64,000 nt of DNA from Phaeosaccion multiseriatum (taxonomy: Eukaryota; Protista; Ochrophyta, other classes). The notes under the pieces were generated by a model, which had not been told where the DNA came from, searched no databases, and saw only the letters and a program-made list of their open reading frames with translations. The stretch covers positions 1,116,001 through 1,180,000 of the forward strand of contig OZ218957.1 in assembly GCA_965112735.1 (NCBI GenBank), given 5' to 3'. The first letter of the stretch is position 1. The number at the start of each line of letters is the position of its first letter. Of this stretch, positions 1,494-10,600 are shown piece after piece. The translations under genes and the position numbers were made by a program.

Positions 1494-1606
1494 GATGATG
1501 AAAAAGAAGGAGTGTAGGAGTTGGTGATCTGTACTTTTTTCTGTGAGCCGGAAATTCTCTCCAATGGCTTGGCGCTGGTGGCTGGCTGCGCTCTCTGTCG
1601 AAGGCC

Positions 1607-2658
1607 ATGTCCTCCTCCCCCCTTCTCGCTCTGTTTGTCTTGATCACTGCCGTGCTGGCGAGAGCGGCAGCTGCGAGCTCGTCAAGATGGACGCTGAAGG
1701 GCAAGTCTGTCCTCGTGACAGGAGGAACGAAGGTGGGTACAACAAAAATATAACACTCCCATGCAGGCGCGGCGACTCTTACGTTGCTTTGATCAAAATC
1801 CTCTCCTCGTTCTTTCAGGGCATAGGGAGAGCCATCGTGGAGGAGATGGGCGCGATGGGGGCCTCTGTGCTCACTTGCGCCAGAAATGAGGCAGAAATGC
1901 AGGCGGCCCTCAGTGAATGGCAGAGTCAGGGCATGGAAGTGGAGGGTGTCATTGCCGACGTCACGAAGGACGAAGACCGGCAACAACTGCTCGCCAAGGT
2001 CTGTTCTTCAGTGTGGAGTTCCCCCACCCCCTCAACTTGGGAAAACGACTCACCCTGCCCCCTCCTCCACACCCCTTTGATATAGGCCAAGGACCTGTTC
2101 AAAGGCCGCCTCGATGTGCTTGTCAACAACGTAGGGGCCAATATTCGCAAACCCACTGTAGAGTATGATGAAGCGGAGTTCACGCAGCTTTTCCAGGTCA
2201 ACCAGAACAGTTTCTTCTCGCTCACCAAGGGGGCTCATCCGCTGCTGAAGGCTGCGGCGCAAATGGGGGGCCAGGAAGGCACAAACAAGTGCTCCTCGTG
2301 CATAATCAACATTAGTTCAGTGGGCGGGATGGTGCCCATCAAGTCAGGCTCTCCATACGGAATGAATAAAGCGGCCATGAATCACGCCACGCGCTTTTGG
2401 GCGTGCGAGTTTGCCAAGGATCACATTCGAGTGAACTGCGTGTGCCCATGGTATACCGACACTCCCCTAGCTGCGCCTGTGCTTCAGGACAAGGCGAAGC
2501 TAGCGGAAATCATAGACCGAACGCCAATGGGGAGGATAGCAACCGCGGAAGAAGTATCGGGATTGTGTGCATTTTTAGCCATGCCCGCGGCCAGCTACAT
2601 TACTGGGCAGAACATCGCAATCGATGGAGGCTTTACGTGCAATGGTTGGATGAGCTGA
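1607..2658 (+). CDS. Tropinone reductase-like short-chain dehydrogenase/reductase with a predicted N-terminal signal peptide (2 introns)
   Basis: Spliced reading MSSSPLLALFVLITAVLARAAAASSSRWTLKGKSVLVTGGTK|GIGRAIVEE...LVNNVG...SS...YGMNK (YxxxK)...IRVNCVCPWYTDT...RTPMGR...YITGQNIAIDGG. Confidence 0.9.
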
Positions 2659-2869
2659 GGCTCTCTCTCGGCTGCAGATGTATGGTGCCCAACATCCTCT
2701 CCCCAAACCCTTGGCTGGGGTGACTTAAACACGCCATACACCGCGGTGCCTTCTCAGAAAGGTCTGGCGCAGGGCTGGGCGGAGAGAGGGCTCTGTGTCG
2801 AAAGCTCCGCCAGAGAAAGGCGCTGGAGGGGACGAGTTCAGGAGCGACCTCGTCGCTGCTCGCTCACTG

Positions 2870-3010
2870 GGCACAGCAGTAGCAGCTGTAGTAGAGGCAG
2901 CTGCGGGACAGCACCAGCGGCAGCAGTCGTATCAGCAGCCGCAGCAGTCGCAGCAGCAGTTGTATCAGTAGCCGTATCCGCAGCAGCAGCAGTAGTAGCA
3001 GCAGCAATAG
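2870..3010. repeat. Degenerate (GCA/GTA)n trinucleotide tract between convergent genes
   Basis: Runs of gcagcagca/gtagca visible directly. Confidence 0.75.
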
Positions 3011-3064
3011 CGCTACAGCCCTTGGAATATTCGAGAGAAGTCTCTCTCCTACTCGATGAGAGCG

Positions 3065-4428
3065 TCAGGTCACCAGGTCTTCCCTCTTGGCGGCATGTCG
3101 CAGCAGGACTTGTCTCGTGGGCGTGGCCCCCGTCTCGTCGGCGTCGTCCATGAACTGCACACCAACTGTGGCGCTCCCACCCTGCGGGTTTGCGAGGAGC
3201 GTTTTTTTTTTTTTGAGTTTTAACAAGTTTTCTCCCCCAAGACTCAACTGCGAAGCTTGGTCTATTTCCAAGCACACGTACCGCTCCACCTCTGCGAGGC
3301 ATTTGTGTGACAATGGCCCTGTAGAAACTCGTCGTGTCGGGATACACTGCCAAAATCTCCTCTCCCTTGGTAAGCTTGGTCGCTCTTCTTTCCAGCTCGA
3401 TGACTCGAGACTCTGGCAGGTCGTACGTTTTCGAATTGTCGTCCTCGTCCATCACCTGCGAGGAGGAGCACCAGCAGCAGCAGCGGGGCAGACGCCTGCT
3501 TCAATTCCCCGCCCCAGCGAGCACGCACTACAAAATTACCGCCCCACACACTAACCTTGTACTCGCCAATGTCCCGATCGTACTCCAGCACTCGCGCCAG
3601 CACCCATAGATCTTCGGAGGGGTCGGTTTGGATGGCCACCTCTTCTCCGGGCTTGGCCCCAACAGTGTCAAACTCCCCTGTGTGTTGAATTTTGCAATGA
3701 GATCACGCGCACATGTGGCCCACAAAAGGCCTCTGAAATTTCTCACCGGCATCCTTGAGCTTTTCCTCGAAGATTTGGAGGTCCGTCCTGAGGCGATGCA
3801 GGTGCGACTCCACCCCTTGGTACACCTGGTCGGCGATGGCGACCTTTTCTTCCACGATTTGCTGCGCTTTGAGCCTCTTCTCTGCAATGTCCGCCTAATA
3901 GTCACAGACAGAGACAGGTCTCGACGTTAAAGGGAAGAGTTGAGACAACCCTATTTCCTTGCCCTGGAGACTCACCATCGCTGCCTCATCTTGCACCACT
4001 CTCAGTGGCGACATGTCCGCCCCCCCTTCGCCCTGCTCACTGCTCTTCGCTTTGAGCTTCTTCTTGGCCTTGACCAGGAAGGCCTTCTCCGCCTCCGCCA
4101 GCTCACTGCGTTGTCGGGAGACTGACTCTGTGAGGCACTACATTTCGAGCCTTCGATGCAGCTTTGCGGGGCAACTCACTTGACTGAGTCGATGGCCTGC
4201 TTATCAAGCGTCTTCATAAGGTCGAAAGAGCGCTTAATCTCGTTGGGTAGGGATGTCACCCCCTCCATAAAGTCCTGCAAGCACACAGTGTAGCGTTGAA
4301 GGGTGGTAAATCAGTCAGTCAGTCAGTCCTTACCCGCCCCCAATCTCTGTAGCGCCTGTGCATGAAGTCACCTCGATAAACGTGGTCTCATCGCCCCCGG
4401 ACTGCGACGGCCCTCCTCTGTATGCCAT
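3065..4428 (-). CDS. ING N-terminal helical domain fused to an SGF29-type tandem Tudor domain (multi-exon)
   Basis: Exons give MAYRGG..TTFIE|DFMEGVTSLPNEIKRSFDLMKTLDKQ...EEKVAIADQVYQGVESHLHRLRTDLQIFEEKL (ING-N), then LWVLARVLEYDRDIGEYK|VMDEDD...RVIEL...ILAVYPDTTSFYRAIV...VQFMDDADETG (SGF29 Tudor pair). Confidence 0.85.
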
Positions 4429-4646
4429 GTCCTCTGCTCGTTGGTGAGGAGTGGGCGGGCGGGAACTCCACAATCGCTCCGTTAGTTCGGGTTATAGTTG
4501 CGCGGGATTTTTGAAGAAACCGAAGAGTCGTATGGGAAGGCGCCCAAAACTTTCAACTGCTTATACGAGCCTTCAGCTCCTCGGGAGTCCAAAGAAAATG
4601 ACCTGGAAATGGGCGCTCGCTTCTTCCCATTCCATCGATAGCAAGC

Positions 4647-7600
4647 ATGCGAGGGAGGCTCCTCTGGCCCTGTGGTAGCTTTGCATTGATCCATCTTCTC
4701 GCCCTTGCCGGACGTGGAGATGCTCAGGTGACAACAAGTGACCAAGGTCCCCTTTGCTTCCATCTCTTACCATTATCTACGTTACATGCCTCCTACACCA
4801 TGCACCAACCACAGATTGCACCACCTTTTTGGGAGAGAAGGAGGAAAGAGTCTCGCTATGACGAGAGCGACGCTCCCACAGGGGTAAGGGACTGCAAGGG
4901 GATACAAGGGAATGCAGGGAAGAAGAAGGCTTGATGTAGCACAGTAGACTAGATTGAAGGTCCTCGTCCACCCCATACGCCCCTCACTCTCTCTCTCTGT
5001 TTCTGTATCCGCAGGTTCTACCCAATCAGGGAGGGAGGGAATGTGAAGATGCCTGCTTCGCAATCAACCCTTTGGAACCATGCTTCTTTGATACTGCCTG
5101 CGTGAAATCGTGTGGAGATGGAGAAAGTTGTAAGTCGTGCTGCTTGCGAAAGGTCTCCAACATTCATTGTGCCTCTCGCATCTCATTTGTCCCCAGATGA
5201 TGATGCTTTGACCACCTCCCCTGTCTTCTTAACCTCTCTTTTGTGTGGCCATGCTATCCACTGCTAGGCTTCGGATGCAATGCGGCTGGTATTCGACGTG
5301 AGTGTCGATTCTGTGGCTTCTCTCTGTTCAAGGCTTGTCCCGAGGGATCTGCGCCAGCACCAGCCCCGAGCAGTAAGTGCCCCTGTCGGACCTCATACGT
5401 TTCAATACAATCGTAGCTCACCGTCATTCTTTCCCCCTTGCGTCATTTGCAGCAGGGCCACCCATAGCCGTGACAACCCCCGTCCCTGCTACAGCAACGG
5501 TACCCGTACCCACTGAGACACCCTTTCGTCCAACCAGCAGCGACGAGTGCTCGCAGATCTGCCGAGTCACGAACCCAAGAGAGCCCTGTTTTTCGGACGA
5601 TACTTGCCCAGGCAAACTCGGCTGTGGAGCGCTGGTCAGCACAGGAGCTCCAGTCACAGTGACCCTAAAATGCCGCTTCTGTGGTTTCTCTTCGTTCCCT
5701 TCTTGCCCCAAGGAGGTATTGCCGACACCAGCACCAGGTAAACCCTCTGCACTATCCAACTCATCCCTCGACATCACTTCGGCTCACCATGTCCTCCTGG
5801 TTTTCATGGACCATCTGCAGTACCGGAGCAATCTGCAGCTACGCCGACCCCAGCGAGGACTCCTGTACCAGCAGTCCCTACAACAACCACTGCACCAGTA
5901 CCGCCTGCGACTGCAACGCCGGTGCCCACCACTGCTGCTAGCGACGAGTGCTCCCAGATTTGTAGCACCGCCAACCCTAGCGAGCCCTGTTTCACTGATG
6001 ACTCCTGCCCAGGTCTCCTCGGATGTGGAGCACTTGCCAGCACAGGCATTCCCATTGCGACAGCCTTGAAGTGCCGCTTCTGTGGGCAAACTTCGCCGCT
6101 CTTCCCAGCCTGCCCCGATGTGCCCACTGCAACACCGCCCGTGGCAACCCCTGATCCTACGGTGGCACCTACCATGACAACCCCCGAGCCGACGCCTGTA
6201 CCTCTGGTACCTACGACTTCAGCCCCTACACCTGCACCTTTGGTTCCTACGACTTCAGCCCCTACACCTGCACCTCTGGTACCTCCGACTTCTGCCCCTA
6301 TCACTGCAACTGCTACGCCTACGACTGCACCGACCCCAACATTCGCTCCTCTTCCTCCATCGCCAACCGACGCGCCGACTCTGGTGAGTGTGGCTTTGTT
6401 GTTAGGGAGTAGTAGGACCGTTGGATTGATCTGAGTTCGTAACCTACACGAGAGAGAAGCATGTTGAGCTTCTCTGGCTCAGGTGTTGCTTGACGTTTTT
6501 CTTGGGCTTGTACCCTACCTGCCCACCTCTATTTCCCTCCCTACGGTATCTCCTCTTCTTCGCCAAGGGGCACTCAACGCTTTTACGCAAGACTTGCTTC
6601 CTTTGAGTGTGTAATTTTTAATTTTAGTTGCAGACCACCACTCAGCTCCACCCCCCCCCCCGCGCTGTCTTGTGTCCTTGCCTTTGCTCGTACTCCAGGC
6701 ACCAACCTCAACACCGAGCTTGGGACAAACTTTGCTGCTGGACAGCGTGTATGAAGTGGGTTTTCCTATCAAACTCGTAACGTGTTCGATCGATACCATC
6801 ACATTCCGTGACGTGCCCAGCGAAGAACTGCAGTCGTTCGCTATTGGGACGGTATTGTACGCTCCATTAATCGGACTGTCATCAGTCGTGGACGCAGTCA
6901 CCTTTCCCGCACTGGATGTGTCGGAGGCCGAAACGGGTGATGTTGCGTGCACGTGCAATCAGTTTGCACGCGTAGTCACAGGGGCACCTTCACAGCAGCT
7001 GAATGGCCTTACTGTCGTTCCTACGAGAGGAGCGACCTTGGGGGAACTCTTCCGCGCATCGGTCTTGGAAGATGTGCACGGCACAGACTCCATGGTGTCT
7101 TCTCTTCGCGTGGAGGAGGGGAACCCAGGGCTGTGCGCGGCATCCATCCCCGTGCCGTGGGGGGAAGCAGGCATCATCAACGCCTCAGGGAGGGTGCAGC
7201 GACGACTTGACGTCACCGACGTCAGTCAATGTTTGGCCAAGTGGGACCCCCAAAATGGCGGAGCGTGCCCATTCAATGGGAATTGCTCGCCGCTCCAGTG
7301 CTACTTTTGCGGAAACACCGAAGAATGTACGTTCTTTGAGCGTTTAGAGTACTCTTTGTCTTTTCTGCCCTACTCGAACCTCGCTCAACACATCCTTTCT
7401 TGCTCTTGCTCGTGTCACAGGTCTTGAGCCGGGCCCTGGCTTTTTTAATGTTTGTTCGCTCTTCGTTGGTACGTGCTGGAGGAGGTCACGCGTCCGCCTC
7501 AACTCTCTGTCTGTGGTCGGCTCTGACGTAGTGCTTGATTTCCCTCTGTACTCACCCTGCTCTCCATATTCCCCATATACCCTCTCTTCCACTCCACGTA

Positions 7601-10600
7601 CTTGGGGGCTGTACGTCCAGACTTTGTTACTACGGACCTGTCCGTCGTAGACATCAAGGGGCCTTGCTGTGAGCACGACATGTGCTTCTTCACTGCAGAC
7701 ACTGCCGAGCAAACCAAAGTGTGTAGCAATGCATTCATGGACGACGTTTTCTTTGCATGCGGAAATCAGGTAAGATCAGAGACCTCCTCAGGGGGGCGGC
7801 AGCTTTCGGTATCGCTGTTGGGGTCGCGTGTCAGGTCGTATTGCCACCCCTCCCGGTCCTGCTCTCGCCTGTGCTGGAGCTATACCCTGTACTATGGCTG
7901 CTGGAGGCTAACATTAAGTACAGTAGTAGTCGCATCACATGTGCACTCATGGAGACCCCCAACCCCCCTCTCGCCCCCCTTTCCGACTGGCAGTGCGTCG
8001 CACAGTACAAGGGCGATGAGGATGAGGAGGGATTCTTTGAAATTGTGGCCACAAGAGCGTGCATCGGGAGATGCAAAGGGGTGTCGCTGTTAGTTGGCGG
8101 TGTCGTGGTTGGGTTAACGAACGCCGAGAAGGTGGGCCAGGATGATCTTGGGTCTCAAACCAAGTACGAACAGTTGTGTGACTGCGATGCGGACCCTGGC
8201 ACTATTGTCAGTCCAAGCCCAGTGCCTGGATCGTGGGTGCAAGAAACAGGGACTCTCGGCGGCCGCGAGTACACTGTGGTTGGTACGTGTGGGCCTTCGC
8301 CGGGGCCGCCACCTGTACCGCAGACAGCGCAACCTGTCCTTCAGCCGATCGCTCCGCAGCCCGTTGCCGTACCACCATCACCGCCACCACCACCGCCACC
8401 ACCACCACCGACACCGACGCAGACCTTCTGCTGTGGATGCGCAAATGGAAGATGCAACAGCTTTGCGGGTCCGGGTAACGCCATCGGATGCTGGCCCGCC
8501 AGTCAGGATAATTGTGCAACAGATCCACCAACCCCTGAGCCGACCCCTGAGCCAACACCTGAGCCGACGCCGGAACCAACACCTGAGCCGACGCCGGAAC
8601 CAACACCAGAGCCGACCCCTGAGCCAACACCAGAGCCGACCCCTGAGCCAACACCAGAGCCGACGCCGGAACCAACACCAGAGCCGACGCCGGAACCAAC
8701 ACCAGTGCCGACGCCGGAACCAACACCTGAGCCGACGCCGGAACCAACCCCTCAGCCCTCTCCCCAACCCACCCCGCGACCTTCGCCACAACCGACGTCG
8801 GAGCCTCCTCCACCGCCTCCTCCCCCACCACCACCTTGTTGTGGTTCCACGAGCGGAGGAGGTCGAGGCGATCCGCACATAGATACTTTCGATGGGCTCG
8901 CTTGGGACTGTCAGGTTACAGGCGAAGTGTGGTGGATGAAGGCGTCGGGTCCTTCCAACTTCAGCGTTCAAGTGCGACAGAGCCCCCAGAACGCGCTCTC
9001 CTTTGGGTCTTTTTCGTATCCAACCGGCGTTGCGGCCACTGAGGATGGCGCCGCGGTTGTCGAGCTGCGCGGTGGACAGGTAGCGACAACTGCGGGCTAC
9101 AGCGTGTTCGTCGACGGTGAAGAGCGTCAGGAGCCTTTCGTGGACGGCGTTCGGGTGATAAACGTCGATGGCGTGGAGATCAAGGACACGAAACACGAAG
9201 TTCGGGAGTCGCGAAGAACAACCACCCTCTCGTTCGCGTCTGGGGTAGTTTTGTCTTACTCCCCATATCTCTTGTTTGGCTTAGTGAACATTATTGTTCC
9301 TGACTCCTTCCGCAACAGCACGACGGGAGTCCTTGGCGACTTCAATGGCAACCCCGCAGACGATCTCATGGTAAGGAAAGCCCAACCAATCTGCAGTTTT
9401 ATCGTAGAGATCAACACAAATTGTATCGAAGCTACTTCTACCCACACCATCTCACCTACATGAATGGCTCAACCAGGTAAACGGAGCAGAGGAGGCTTTC
9501 CTAGAAGCACAAAAAGACCGCACGTCTAGGCAGCGTGAGCTTGAGTACACAGTGTGCGCCTCCTGGTGCACATCAGCCGAAGATTCGCTCTTTACATACG
9601 ACGCGGAAGGCGAGAGCCATGCTTCTTACGACTTCTGTGACGTGCCATGGATGGCCTTCTCTGCGGGGTTTTCGCCAGAGATTCGATCATTCTGTTGCGG
9701 AGAGTGGACGTGCATGGTGGACCTTGCTTTGACTGGTTTGCTCGAGCTGGCGTTGGAGAACCGTGTGTACGCTGAGTCTGGGACGCGGCGTCACGCGCTG
9801 ACGCAGGTTTGGTGGAAGTTCGGGAAAGGGGTCGACTGGGTGAACAACGAGGGCTGGCCCACGAGTGATCCTTGCTCATTCGATTGGTTTGGTGTCGACT
9901 GCACGACCAACTCGGTGTGTGCCAGCGATTTGGACCCCCTTTACACCCTCAACTCGATCAGGCTGGCCGCCAACGGACTGGCGGGCTCTGTGGCAGGCCT
10001 CGTTCCGGATCTTGCAGACCTCCCTCTCGTGGACGTGGATTTGAGCGATAACACTATCAGTGGTGAGCTTCCGGAAGAGCTGGCGAGTGCGCGTTGGACT
10101 GGGTCATTCCAGCTCGAAGACAATAATGTGTCTGGACCCATTCCTGCGGCGTTTGGAAGCGCCTCTTTCTCCGAGCTCCGTTTGGACGGAAACCTTTTGG
10201 AAGGAGCCATCCCTATCGAGTGGTGCACCAGAACTGATATTGTACTCAGCTTGCAGAGGCTTTCTGCCCCAACCAATCGCTTGTGCATGCCCGACGGCTG
10301 TGGGGCCGATGATGTCGGTGGAGTTGGACGTGTCTGCTCGACGATTGCCCGCGACGTTGAGATTCTCTTGCAAGTCTACGATGCTGCAGGAGGGGACGGA
10401 TGGACTTCGTCTGGAGAGGACTGGGTGGAGCAGGGCTTCCCATGCCTCGCTGCTTGGAGTGGGGTGCAGTGTGCGTTTTTCAACGGGCAGATTGGCAAGA
10501 TAGACTTGTCTGTGCAGAACTTGGTGGGCACGCTCTCTGCAGTGGTGACGCCCCTTTTGCAGCTGGACACTCTGAAGGAGTTGGATTTGAGCGGTAACAG

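What the first reader, a model, noticed from the sequence alone, without database searches (positions are those of the whole stretch)
3065..4428. ING protein whose PHD finger is replaced by an SGF29 tandem Tudor: an H3K4me3 reader swap
Seen: the 5' exons, largely missed by the ORF track, read TTFIE|DFMEGVTSLPNEIKRSFDLMKTLDKQ...EEKVAIADQVYQGVESHLHRLRTDLQIFEEKL. They splice to a tandem Tudor that keeps SGF29's acidic pocket (VMDED) and aromatic cage (YPDTTSFY...QFMD). No Cys4-His-Cys3 PHD finger is present. Established: ING proteins join NuA4, NuA3/HBO1 or Sin3/Rpd3L through this N-terminal helical domain and read H3K4me3 with a PHD, while SGF29 reads H3K4me2/3 for SAGA/ATAC. Inference: one methyl-reader has been swapped for an unrelated one with the same target, which could rewire which acetylase or deacetylase complex is recruited to active promoters in this lineage. 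I know of no functional study of such a hybrid, though it may already exist in stramenopile annotations.
Basis: partly seen in the sequence, partly recalled or inferred. Interest (0 to 1): 0.8.

Follow-up and report, generated by a model that had tools for sequence, protein, structure and literature searches.

The report
ING adaptor with SGF29 Tudor reader
This alga has a real seven-exon gene for a chromatin adaptor of the ING family whose usual zinc-finger reader of the "active promoter" histone mark is replaced by an SGF29-type double Tudor; the design is shared by photosynthetic stramenopiles from diatoms to brown algae, is already in databases, and I found no study of it.

Summary
On the minus strand, 4428-3065, seven GT-AG exons give a 280-residue protein. 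Residues about 15-143 are an ING N-terminal domain: two exons each pass Pfam's PF12998 cut-off on their own. Residues about 146-270 are an SGF29 tandem Tudor (PF07039). It keeps the counterparts of human SGF29's Y238, Y245, F264 and D266 cage and its D194/D196 positions. The protein has no cysteine, so no PHD finger.

The gene is not unique. At least 60 related proteins in the databases have the same layout. Every named one comes from an ochrophyte: diatoms, Triparma, pelagophytes, chrysophytes, raphidophytes, eustigmatophytes, xanthophytes and brown algae. Several come from transcriptomes as complete ORFs. Automatic names include "SGF29 tudor-like domain protein" and "Inhibitor of growth protein 4". 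I found no paper on the architecture.

Among solved structures, the N-terminal profile is closest to ING4/ING5. The likeliest role, inferred only, is an ING-type subunit of a MYST acetyltransferase complex that reads H3K4me2/3 through a Tudor.

Earlier notes of this scan report SAP30-Tudor fusions elsewhere in this genome. Their Tudors form a separate clade.

Caveats: there is no RNA data for this organism, and two of four contig sets show a frame-breaking one-base difference in exon 3.

The parts
3065..4428 (-). Whole coding gene: 7 exons (4428-4372, 4274-4180, 4105-3976, 3894-3747, 3677-3556, 3455-3282, 3181-3065), 280 aa, stop TGA at 3067-3065
   Evidence: all introns are GT-AG and 69-100 nt, and the frame is continuous; about 50% identity over the full length to the Chrysoparadoxa, Discosporangium and Tribonema homologues, with conserved columns kept.
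3747..4428 (-). Exons 1-4, encoding the ING N-terminal helical domain (residues about 15-143). Includes the LPNEIKRSFDLMKTLD motif in exon 2 and EEKVAIADQVY...HRLRTDLQIFEEKL in exon 4
   Evidence: PF12998 scores 25.9 and 27.6 bits on exons 2 and 4 separately (cut-off 23.9); family N-terminal profile against PDB gives ING4 4.5e-23, ING5 3.5e-22, ING3 2e-13; the homologue model has helices 6-24, 28-67 and 84-136.
3065..3677 (-). Exons 5-7, encoding the SGF29-type tandem Tudor (residues about 146-270)
   Evidence: PF07039 scores 48.3 bits on exon 6; human SGF29 at E 2.7e-12 (single homologue) and 2.8e-23 (profile); the best structural matches of the homologue model are SGF29 Tudors (3me9_A, Z 13.5, 124 residues aligned).
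3441..3449 (-). Codons D187-E188-D189 (in VMDEDD), aligned to human SGF29 D194-I195-D196. I recall these as the acidic pocket for the H3 N-terminus
   Evidence: alignment. These are invariant columns D180 and D182 of P0001. The residue roles come from my recollection of the structural paper cited by PMC4589357.
3321..3344 (-). Codons Y222 (3344-3342) to Y229 (3323-3321) in YPDTTSFY, aligned to cage residues Y238 and Y245 of human SGF29
   Evidence: Alignments. Cage residues named in PMC4589357. Invariant in the family.
3146..3154 (-). Codons F252-M253-D254 (in VQFMDD), aligned to F264-E265-D266 of human SGF29 (cage edge and acidic cage residue)
   Evidence: alignment. F is invariant in the family.
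4021..4027 (+). C7 run inside exon 3 (G7 on the coding strand) whose length differs between public contig sets of the same sample
   Evidence: table 4: contigs of X2 and X3 have one letter fewer, while X1 and X4 agree with the window; one C fewer would stop translation after 84 residues.
4429..4646 (.). Short intergenic region between this gene's ATG and the ATG of a divergently oriented plus-strand ORF (4647 onward). Presumed shared promoter region
   Evidence: ORF 4647..4934 +. The promoter role is inference only.

Best explanation
The locus is one intact protein-coding gene for a 280-residue chromatin adaptor. It belongs to a family that is widespread in ochrophytes, in which the ING N-terminal helical domain runs directly, through a conserved G-E-F junction, into an SGF29-type tandem Tudor. 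That Tudor stands where other ING proteins carry a PHD finger.

Shown here: the gene model, both domain assignments, the absence of a PHD, conservation of the H3K4me2/3 cage and of the acidic D-x-D positions, and conservation of the architecture across ochrophyte classes, including transcript-derived ORFs.

Inferred: the Tudor binds the H3 N-terminus carrying K4me2/3, as SGF29 does. The ING domain is closest to ING4/ING5 and then ING3 among solved structures. It would dock the protein into an ING-type complex, most likely a MYST-family acetyltransferase complex built on an EPC/JADE/BRPF-like scaffold with EAF6. The complex would then be brought to H3K4-methylated promoters through a Tudor instead of a PHD.
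For: Gene model with canonical splice sites.

Pfam ING hits above cut-off on two separate exons, and an SGF29_Tudor hit.

Of the 150 nearest cluster representatives to the Tudor exon, 147 carry SGF29_Tudor and 38 also carry ING at E <= 0.001. Several rows that lacked an ING label turned out to be sub-threshold ING or truncated models.

Named full-length homologues carrying both Pfam domains come from Chrysoparadoxa, Discosporangium, Tribonema, Nannochloropsis, Chrysophaeum, Pelagophyceae sp. CCMP2097, Seminavis ('Inhibitor of growth protein 4'), Pseudo-nitzschia and Epithemia. Homologues matched here over both halves come from Phaeothamnion (partial record), Vaucheria, Chaetoceros, Fibrocapsa, Epipyxis and Triparma.

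Several of these are complete ORFs assembled from RNA (MMETSP or Trinity).

N-terminal profile against PDB: ING4 4.5e-23, ING5 3.5e-22, ING3 2e-13, Yng2 4e-6, Pho23 6e-3.

The full-length profile hits both human SGF29 (2.8e-23) and ING4 (2.3e-19), and it aligns the cage and acidic positions. Cage residues are defined in PMC4589357.

The AlphaFold model of the closest homologue has pLDDT 89 and shows a helical hairpin followed by a double beta-barrel. Its best structural matches are SGF29 Tudors.

Intron positions are shared with the Chrysoparadoxa gene at or near the ING/Tudor junction and before VMDEDD.

The gene is boxed in by plus-strand genes on both sides. No other minus-strand gene can therefore own the 5' exons.
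Against: No RNA run holds this stretch, so the single transcript in this organism rests on homology.

Contigs of two of the four runs from the one sample have one C fewer in the exon-3 C7 run. If real, this would truncate the protein at residue 84.

No binding or complex data exist for any member.

Human ING1/ING2 N-termini were not among the PDB matches. The ING4/5 assignment is therefore relative only to ING3 and the yeast proteins.

Structural matches of the helical N-terminus are unspecific. ING3 (Z 9.7) and Yng2 (Z 9.0) sit among many unrelated coiled coils.

I could not test whether canonical ING-PHD or canonical SGF29 genes coexist in this genome or lineage.
Confidence: 0.75

Rival explanations
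1. The protein is functionally the lineage's SGF29. It would sit in the GCN5/ADA2/ADA3 acetyltransferase module (SAGA/ATAC-like), and the ING-like helices merely replace or resemble the SGF29 N-terminal coiled coil as the docking element.
For: Automatic annotations call several members 'SGF29 tudor-like domain protein' or 'SAGA-associated factor 29'. Size (260-300 aa) and domain order (helical N-terminus, Tudor C-terminus) match canonical SGF29. No canonical SGF29 appeared among the roughly 200 closest Tudor relatives.
Against: The N-terminus passes Pfam's ING cut-off and matches ING4/5 at E about 1e-22 over its whole length. The PDB matches to SGF29 cover only the Tudor region. The lack of canonical SGF29 in a list ranked by similarity to this Tudor says nothing about its absence from the genomes.
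Confidence: 0.12
2. In this organism the gene is a pseudogene or carries a disabling allele, namely the one-base shorter C-run in exon 3. In that case only a short N-terminal peptide would be made.
For: Contigs of runs X2 and X3 lack one C at 4021-4027. That version stops after 84 residues.
Against: The window and the contigs of X1 (depth 141, 8.1-kb record with 0 differences) and X4 have C7. Only C7 keeps both flanks in the frame that aligns with homologues, and all conserved residues downstream are intact. All four runs are one sample, and X2/X3 have far more tiny records at lower depth. I read that, as inference, as noisier data prone to homopolymer miscalls.
Confidence: 0.05
3. The model wrongly joins two neighbouring genes: an ING-domain-only gene (exons 1-4) and a Tudor-only gene (exons 5-7).
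For: There is no RNA evidence from this organism. Database models with 'ING only' exist.
Against: Those 'ING only' entries are truncated or intron-read-through predictions that still begin the Tudor. The gap between the parts is a 69-nt GT-AG intron in phase. Exon 5 has no Met. RNA-derived complete ORFs in relatives carry both domains. The junction intron lies at or near the same position in Chrysoparadoxa.
Confidence: 0.03
4. The Tudor has drifted to read another ligand (a different methyl-lysine, or a non-histone protein). The protein would then not be an H3K4me reader.
For: No binding data exist. The loop after the cage differs from human SGF29: an invariant extra Asp (D255) and D257 stand where human has T267 and Y269. 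Identity to human SGF29 is only about 32-34%.
Against: All four cage residues and the D-x-D positions are conserved and invariant or nearly so across about 50 family members. SGF29 is the top structural match with a clear margin over other Tudors.
Confidence: 0.1

Closest known systems
ING4/ING5 (human; HBO1 and MOZ/MORF acetyltransferase complexes) and the wider ING family (ING1-3; yeast Yng1, Yng2, Pho23)
   Same: The N-terminal helical ING domain is the same: PF12998 above cut-off, and profile E 4.5e-23 to ING4 (4afl) and 3.5e-22 to ING5 (5mto), with the LP-x-E-hxR-x-h-x-LM-x-LD and D/E-E-K-V motifs. The overall logic also matches: a small adaptor with a complex-docking N-terminus and an H3K4me reader at the C-terminus.
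   Different: The C-terminal PHD finger, which is a defining part of ING proteins, is absent (0 Cys) and an SGF29-type tandem Tudor stands in its place. From what I know of ING proteins, a long flexible linker separates their two domains; here the last helix runs almost directly into the Tudor.
SGF29 (human SGF29/CCDC101, yeast Sgf29; SAGA/ATAC acetyltransferase module)
   Same: The tandem Tudor is the same: PF07039, E 2.8e-23 to human SGF29, Z 13.5 over 124 aligned residues. The counterparts of Y238, Y245, F264, D266 and D194/D196 are conserved.
   Different: The N-terminus is an ING domain, not the SGF29 coiled coil. No part of the N-terminus matched any SGF29 chain in the PDB. From what is known of ING domains, a different host complex is expected.
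SAP30-SGF29 Tudor(-winged helix) fusions of ochrophytes, reported by earlier notes of this scan elsewhere in the same genome
   Same: They share the same Tudor subfamily (YPDTTSFY-type) attached to a docking module for a histone (de)acetylation complex. 15 of the 150 nearest representatives carry SAP30_Sin3_bdg, and some also carry a Forkhead-like domain.
   Different: The docking module differs (SAP30 Sin3-binding region instead of ING), as does the position of the Tudor within the protein. Their Tudors form one separate clade (SH-aLRT 99) that contains no ING-type protein, so the two fusions are old and independent lineages.

Membership tests
ING (inhibitor of growth) family | N-terminal ING helical domain (Pfam PF12998) | tested here: met
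   exon 2 scores 25.9 bits and exon 4 scores 27.6 bits (cut-off 23.9); the closest homologue, P0001, scores 44.3 bits over profile positions 1-99. ING4 and ING5 at about E 1e-22.
ING (inhibitor of growth) family | C-terminal PHD finger (Cys4-His-Cys3) that reads H3K4me3 | tested here: not met
   0 Cys and 3 His in 280 aa; no PHD hit. The stop codon lies where the homologues end. The protein is therefore not filed as a canonical ING protein.
ING (inhibitor of growth) family | Stoichiometric subunit of a MYST acetyltransferase or Sin3/Rpd3 deacetylase complex | not testable with these tools
   This needs IP-MS. There is only a hint: the hybrids are closest to ING4/5 and then ING3 among solved N-termini.
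SGF29 family | C-terminal tandem Tudor (Pfam PF07039, SGF29_Tudor) | tested here: met
   exon 6 scores 48.3 bits. P0001 scores 80.8 bits over profile positions 2-132; the best structural matches are 3meu, 3me9 and 3mp1.
SGF29 family | Aromatic/acidic cage (human Y238, Y245, F264, D266) and acidic pocket for H3A1 | tested here: met
   alignment gives Y222, Y229, F252 and D254, and D187/D189 for D194/D196. The cage residues are named in PMC4589357. Actual binding was not tested.
SGF29 family | N-terminal coiled coil that docks into the GCN5/ADA2/ADA3 module | tested here: inconclusive
   The N-terminus scores as ING, and PDB matches to SGF29 are confined to the Tudor. None of the PDB matches included an SGF29 N-terminus, so I could not compare against it directly.
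ING_N + SGF29_Tudor hybrid family of ochrophytes (no name or description found) | Both domains in this order in one protein of about 260-300 aa, joined at a conserved G-E-F junction, with the Tudor motifs D-E-D-D, AVYPDTTSFY and F-x-D-D-x-D | tested here: met
   the window protein keeps the invariant and nearly invariant columns and is about 50% identical to P0001, P0152 and P0169; its Tudor lies outside the SAP30-type clade and is nearest to P0001.

The most novel reading that the evidence does not exclude
In ochrophytes the SGF29-type tandem Tudor may have displaced the PHD finger as the H3K4me2/3 reader of the ING4/5-class subunit, so that the hybrid is the only protein of that class in these genomes. 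Together with the SAP30-Tudor fusions, one reader fold would then steer both a MYST acetyltransferase complex and the Sin3 deacetylase complex to methylated promoters. That would be a lineage-wide rewiring of the H3K4me-to-acetylation circuit, dating back to the ochrophyte ancestor.
Probability: 0.2. Interest if true: 0.7.

Novelty: new variant of a known kind. Interest (0 to 1): 0.5.

Why it matters
ING proteins are the textbook link between H3K4me3 and histone acetylation or deacetylation, and the PHD finger is regarded as part of their definition. Here an entire major algal lineage (diatoms, brown algae, eustigmatophytes and others) carries an ING-domain adaptor in which an unrelated fold with the same known ligand stands in for the PHD.

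That makes a clean natural experiment on whether reader modules are interchangeable. It also gives a concrete candidate for how promoter H3K4 methylation is coupled to acetylation in ecologically dominant and genetically tractable algae such as Phaeodactylum, Nannochloropsis and Ectocarpus.

The value is tempered on two counts. Lineage-specific swapping of reader domains is a recognised pattern in general (bioRxiv 10.1101/2021.11.30.470311). The proteins are also already in public databases under automatic names.

Tried and rejected
1. A word-indexed protein search with the read-through ORF 2838-3455 (region 1-58) found no candidate. The window's own protein did not turn up in that search.

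2. A search for RNA runs found only four holders from one sample and study, none on record as RNA. Laying their contigs showed no splice joints, only genomic contigs. The single-transcript question therefore could not be settled directly.

3. The last word-indexed search, with an N-terminal alignment (A3), was meant to recover ING-PHD proteins of ochrophytes for a class-level phylogeny. It returned only more hybrids. The entries listed with 'ING only' proved to be truncated or intron-read-through gene models of hybrids. The coexistence of canonical ING-PHD and SGF29, and the exact ING class, remain untested.

4. The top 50 Foldseek matches are all to Tudor-type domains, none to an ING N-terminus. 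The exhaustive structural search lists ING3 and Yng2 only among many unrelated coiled coils. I therefore give the structural match of the helical part no weight.

5. The protein-atlas look-up of the N-terminus gave ING clusters at scores of 0.83-0.85. These are below the level the tool calls reliable, so I treat them only as a lead.

6. Seven literature searches and two papers read for ING+SGF29, stramenopile, diatom, Nannochloropsis, Ectocarpus and Pfam accessions found no description of the hybrid.

7. The spliced 280-aa sequence has no reference. I did not paste it into any tool. Domain scans used exon references, and the fold used the closest homologue, P0001 (about 51% identical).

Full report
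**1. What is in the sequence**

The stretch 3065-4428 carries a minus-strand gene. From the raw sequence I built a seven-exon model. The exons are 4428-4372, 4274-4180, 4105-3976, 3894-3747, 3677-3556, 3455-3282 and 3181-3065. All six introns begin with GT, end with AG and are 69-100 nt long. The CDS is 843 nt and encodes 280 residues, ending at TGA 3067-3065.

The ORF track shows only fragments, because most exons are shorter than 60 codons.

The gene is flanked by plus-strand genes on both sides. A short-chain dehydrogenase gene ends at 2658. An ORF with a signal-peptide-like start begins at 4647. No other minus-strand gene can therefore own the 5' exons.

**2. Domain identity**

Because the spliced protein has no reference, I scanned the exons one by one.
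- The ING N-terminal domain (PF12998, cut-off 23.9 bits) is hit twice independently. Exon 2 scores 25.9 bits on profile positions 4-32, and exon 4 scores 27.6 bits on positions 63-100.
- SGF29_Tudor (PF07039) is hit by exon 6 (48.3 bits, E 1.3e-12) and weakly by exon 5 (13.2 bits).
- The protein has no cysteine and three histidines, so there is no zinc finger of any kind.

**3. Relatives**

An exhaustive HMMER search with exon 6 found 208 cluster representatives at E <= 0.001. Pfam scans of the best 150 gave SGF29_Tudor in 147, ING in 38, SAP30_Sin3_bdg in 15 and Forkhead in 4.

Local phmmer with the two halves of my model showed many proteins of 255-300 aa that match both halves in the same order. 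Word-indexed searches seeded with these added more. Every full-length one has both PF12998 and PF07039 precomputed.

Entries that appeared to have ING alone are truncated or intron-read-through models that still begin the Tudor. Several rows that lacked an ING label have sub-threshold ING hits.

Named sources:
- Related PX-clade algae: Chrysoparadoxa australica, Discosporangium mesarthrocarpum, Tribonema minus and T. gayanum, Phaeothamnion confervicola, Vaucheria litorea.
- Eustigmatophytes, raphidophytes and chrysophytes: Nannochloropsis gaditana (EWM21243.1), Fibrocapsa japonica, Epipyxis and a 'chrysophyte H1'.
- Pelagophytes and Parmales: Chrysophaeum taylorii, Pelagophyceae sp. CCMP2097, Triparma columacea and T. 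retinervis.
- Diatoms: Chaetoceros dichaeta, Thalassiothrix antarctica, Asterionellopsis glacialis, Seminavis robusta, Pseudo-nitzschia multistriata and Epithemia.

Apart from one entry, all are ochrophytes. The exception comes from a foraminifer transcriptome (Bolivina). I suspect it is of diatom origin but did not test this.

Several entries are complete ORFs from assembled RNA (MMETSP 'type:complete', Trinity). This shows that the two domains are on one mRNA in relatives.

The window protein is about 50% identical to the best of them and keeps the conserved columns. That includes the MAYR... start and the G-E-F junction.

In the Chrysoparadoxa locus the HSP ends place introns at or near three of the window gene's intron positions. 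These are before exon 4, at the ING/Tudor junction, and exactly before VMDEDD.

**4. Which ING, which Tudor**

A profile of 36 hybrid N-termini, searched against all PDB sequences, gave these matches:

| Protein | E-value | Score |
|---|---|---|
| ING4 | 4.5e-23 | 85 bits |
| ING5 | 3.5e-22 | 82 bits |
| ING3 | 2e-13 | 54 bits |
| Yng2 | 4e-6 | 30 bits |
| Pho23 | 6e-3 | 20 bits |
| Yng1, Png2 | about 0.8 | 13 bits |

The ING4/5 alignments cover the whole crystallised coiled-coil domain. Human ING1/2 N-termini were not among the matches. The statement 'closest to ING4/5' therefore holds only relative to ING3 and the fungal proteins. One diatom member is automatically named 'Inhibitor of growth protein 4'.

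The full-length family profile hits human SGF29 at 2.8e-23 and ING4 at 2.3e-19. In that alignment the cage residues of human SGF29 (Y238, Y245, F264, D266, as named in PMC4589357) correspond to Y222, Y229, F252 and D254 of the window protein. D194/D196 correspond to D187/D189. I recall D194/D196 as the acidic H3A1 pocket; the paper itself names only a negatively charged pocket. These columns are invariant or nearly so in a 50-member alignment.

An AlphaFold model of the closest homologue (P0001, with that alignment) is confident (pLDDT 89.1). It shows helices 6-24, 28-67 and 84-136 followed by two small beta-barrels. Its best structural matches are human and yeast SGF29 Tudors: Foldseek E 2e-10 and VIA Z 13.5 and 12.9. 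The helical part matches ING3 (Z 9.7) and Yng2 in NuA4 (Z 9.0), but only among many unrelated coiled coils, so I give that no weight.

**5. Context in the lineage**

Earlier notes of this scan describe SAP30-SGF29 Tudor fusions at other places in the same genome. I saw that family among the relatives too: SAP30_Sin3_bdg, then Tudor, often followed by a Forkhead-like domain.

In a maximum-likelihood tree of 111 Tudor domains, the SAP30-type Tudors form one clade (SH-aLRT 99) that contains no ING-type protein. All ING-type Tudors, including the window's, lie outside it. The tree is unrooted and has few columns. It shows only that the two fusion families are distinct and old.

**6. How it most likely works**

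Shown: one gene, an ING docking domain, an SGF29-type Tudor with intact ligand-binding residues, and conservation across ochrophyte classes.

Inferred from what is established for the parent families:
- The Tudor binds the free H3 N-terminus carrying K4me2/3.
- The ING domain inserts the protein into an ING-type complex.
- Because the domain is most like ING4/5 and ING3, which serve MYST acetyltransferase complexes (PMC12876503 abstract), I favour a MYST complex.

The rival that the protein acts as the lineage's SGF29 in a GCN5 module cannot be excluded without proteomics.

**7. Caveats**

No RNA run holds this stretch. The four holders are contig sets of one sample. They carry the introns and show no joints.

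Contigs of two of these runs have one C fewer in the C7 run at 4021-4027 (exon 3). That version would end the protein at residue 84. The other two runs, including an 8.1-kb contig with no differences, agree with the window. Only C7 keeps both flanks in the frame shared with homologues. I take the shorter run to be a homopolymer miscall, but this is inference.

**8. Novelty and score**

The architecture is real, ancient and widespread, and it already sits in public databases under automatic names. I found no paper that mentions it. A broad survey of chromatin evolution notes lineage-specific swaps of reader domains in general but not this one.

I class it as a new variant of a known kind, with interest 0.5. 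It is a tidy natural example of non-homologous replacement of a reader domain in a textbook adaptor family. It is directly testable in model diatoms and eustigmatophytes, but it is neither a new mechanism nor a new fold.

Noticed in passing
window 4021-4027 (exon 3 of the gene): The length of the C7 homopolymer differs between public contig sets of the same sample. X2 and X3 have one C fewer, which would shift the frame, while X1 and X4 match the window.
   Followed up: partly
relatives P0064, P0141, P0111, P0107, P0168 (not in the window): A second ochrophyte family joins a SAP30 Sin3-binding region, an SGF29-type Tudor and a weak Forkhead/winged-helix-like C-terminus. Its Tudors form a clade separate from the ING-type ones.
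   Followed up: partly
window 2865-3010: A long imperfect GCA/GCT (CAG-type) trinucleotide repeat lies just downstream of the stop codon, probably in the 3' UTR. Contigs of the public runs break or pile up here (tables 1 and 2).
   Followed up: no
window 4311-4334 (intron 1) and 3460-3487 (intron 5): A GTCA tetranucleotide microsatellite (intron 1) and a GCA/GCT-rich stretch (intron 5) match other contigs of the same runs (loose ends and extra depth). They are dispersed simple repeats inside the introns.
   Followed up: no
window 1543-2658, plus strand: A short-chain dehydrogenase/reductase gene (adh_short_C2, E 1.4e-41 on its last exon) converges on the 3' end of the ING-Tudor gene.
   Followed up: partly
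window 4647 onward, plus strand: A divergently oriented ORF with a signal-peptide-like start begins only 218 bp from the ING-Tudor ATG, which suggests a shared bidirectional promoter. Another note of this scan (s1-360537) places a secreted VWD-LRR protein at 7290-8080.
   Followed up: no
relative P0013 (EukProt 'Bolivina argentea'): An ING-Tudor hybrid is recorded in a foraminifer transcriptome. Every other named source is an ochrophyte, so it may come from diatom prey or symbionts.
   Followed up: no
relatives P0002 (2087 aa), P0079 (1528 aa), P0115 (1473 aa), P0038, P0080, P0108: Long proteins with 3-6 separate matches to the Tudor exon, also hit by other Tudor-type Pfam families across the set (Tudor_5, DUF4537, Agenet), rank among the nearest relatives. 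They look like multi-Tudor proteins of unknown origin.
   Followed up: no
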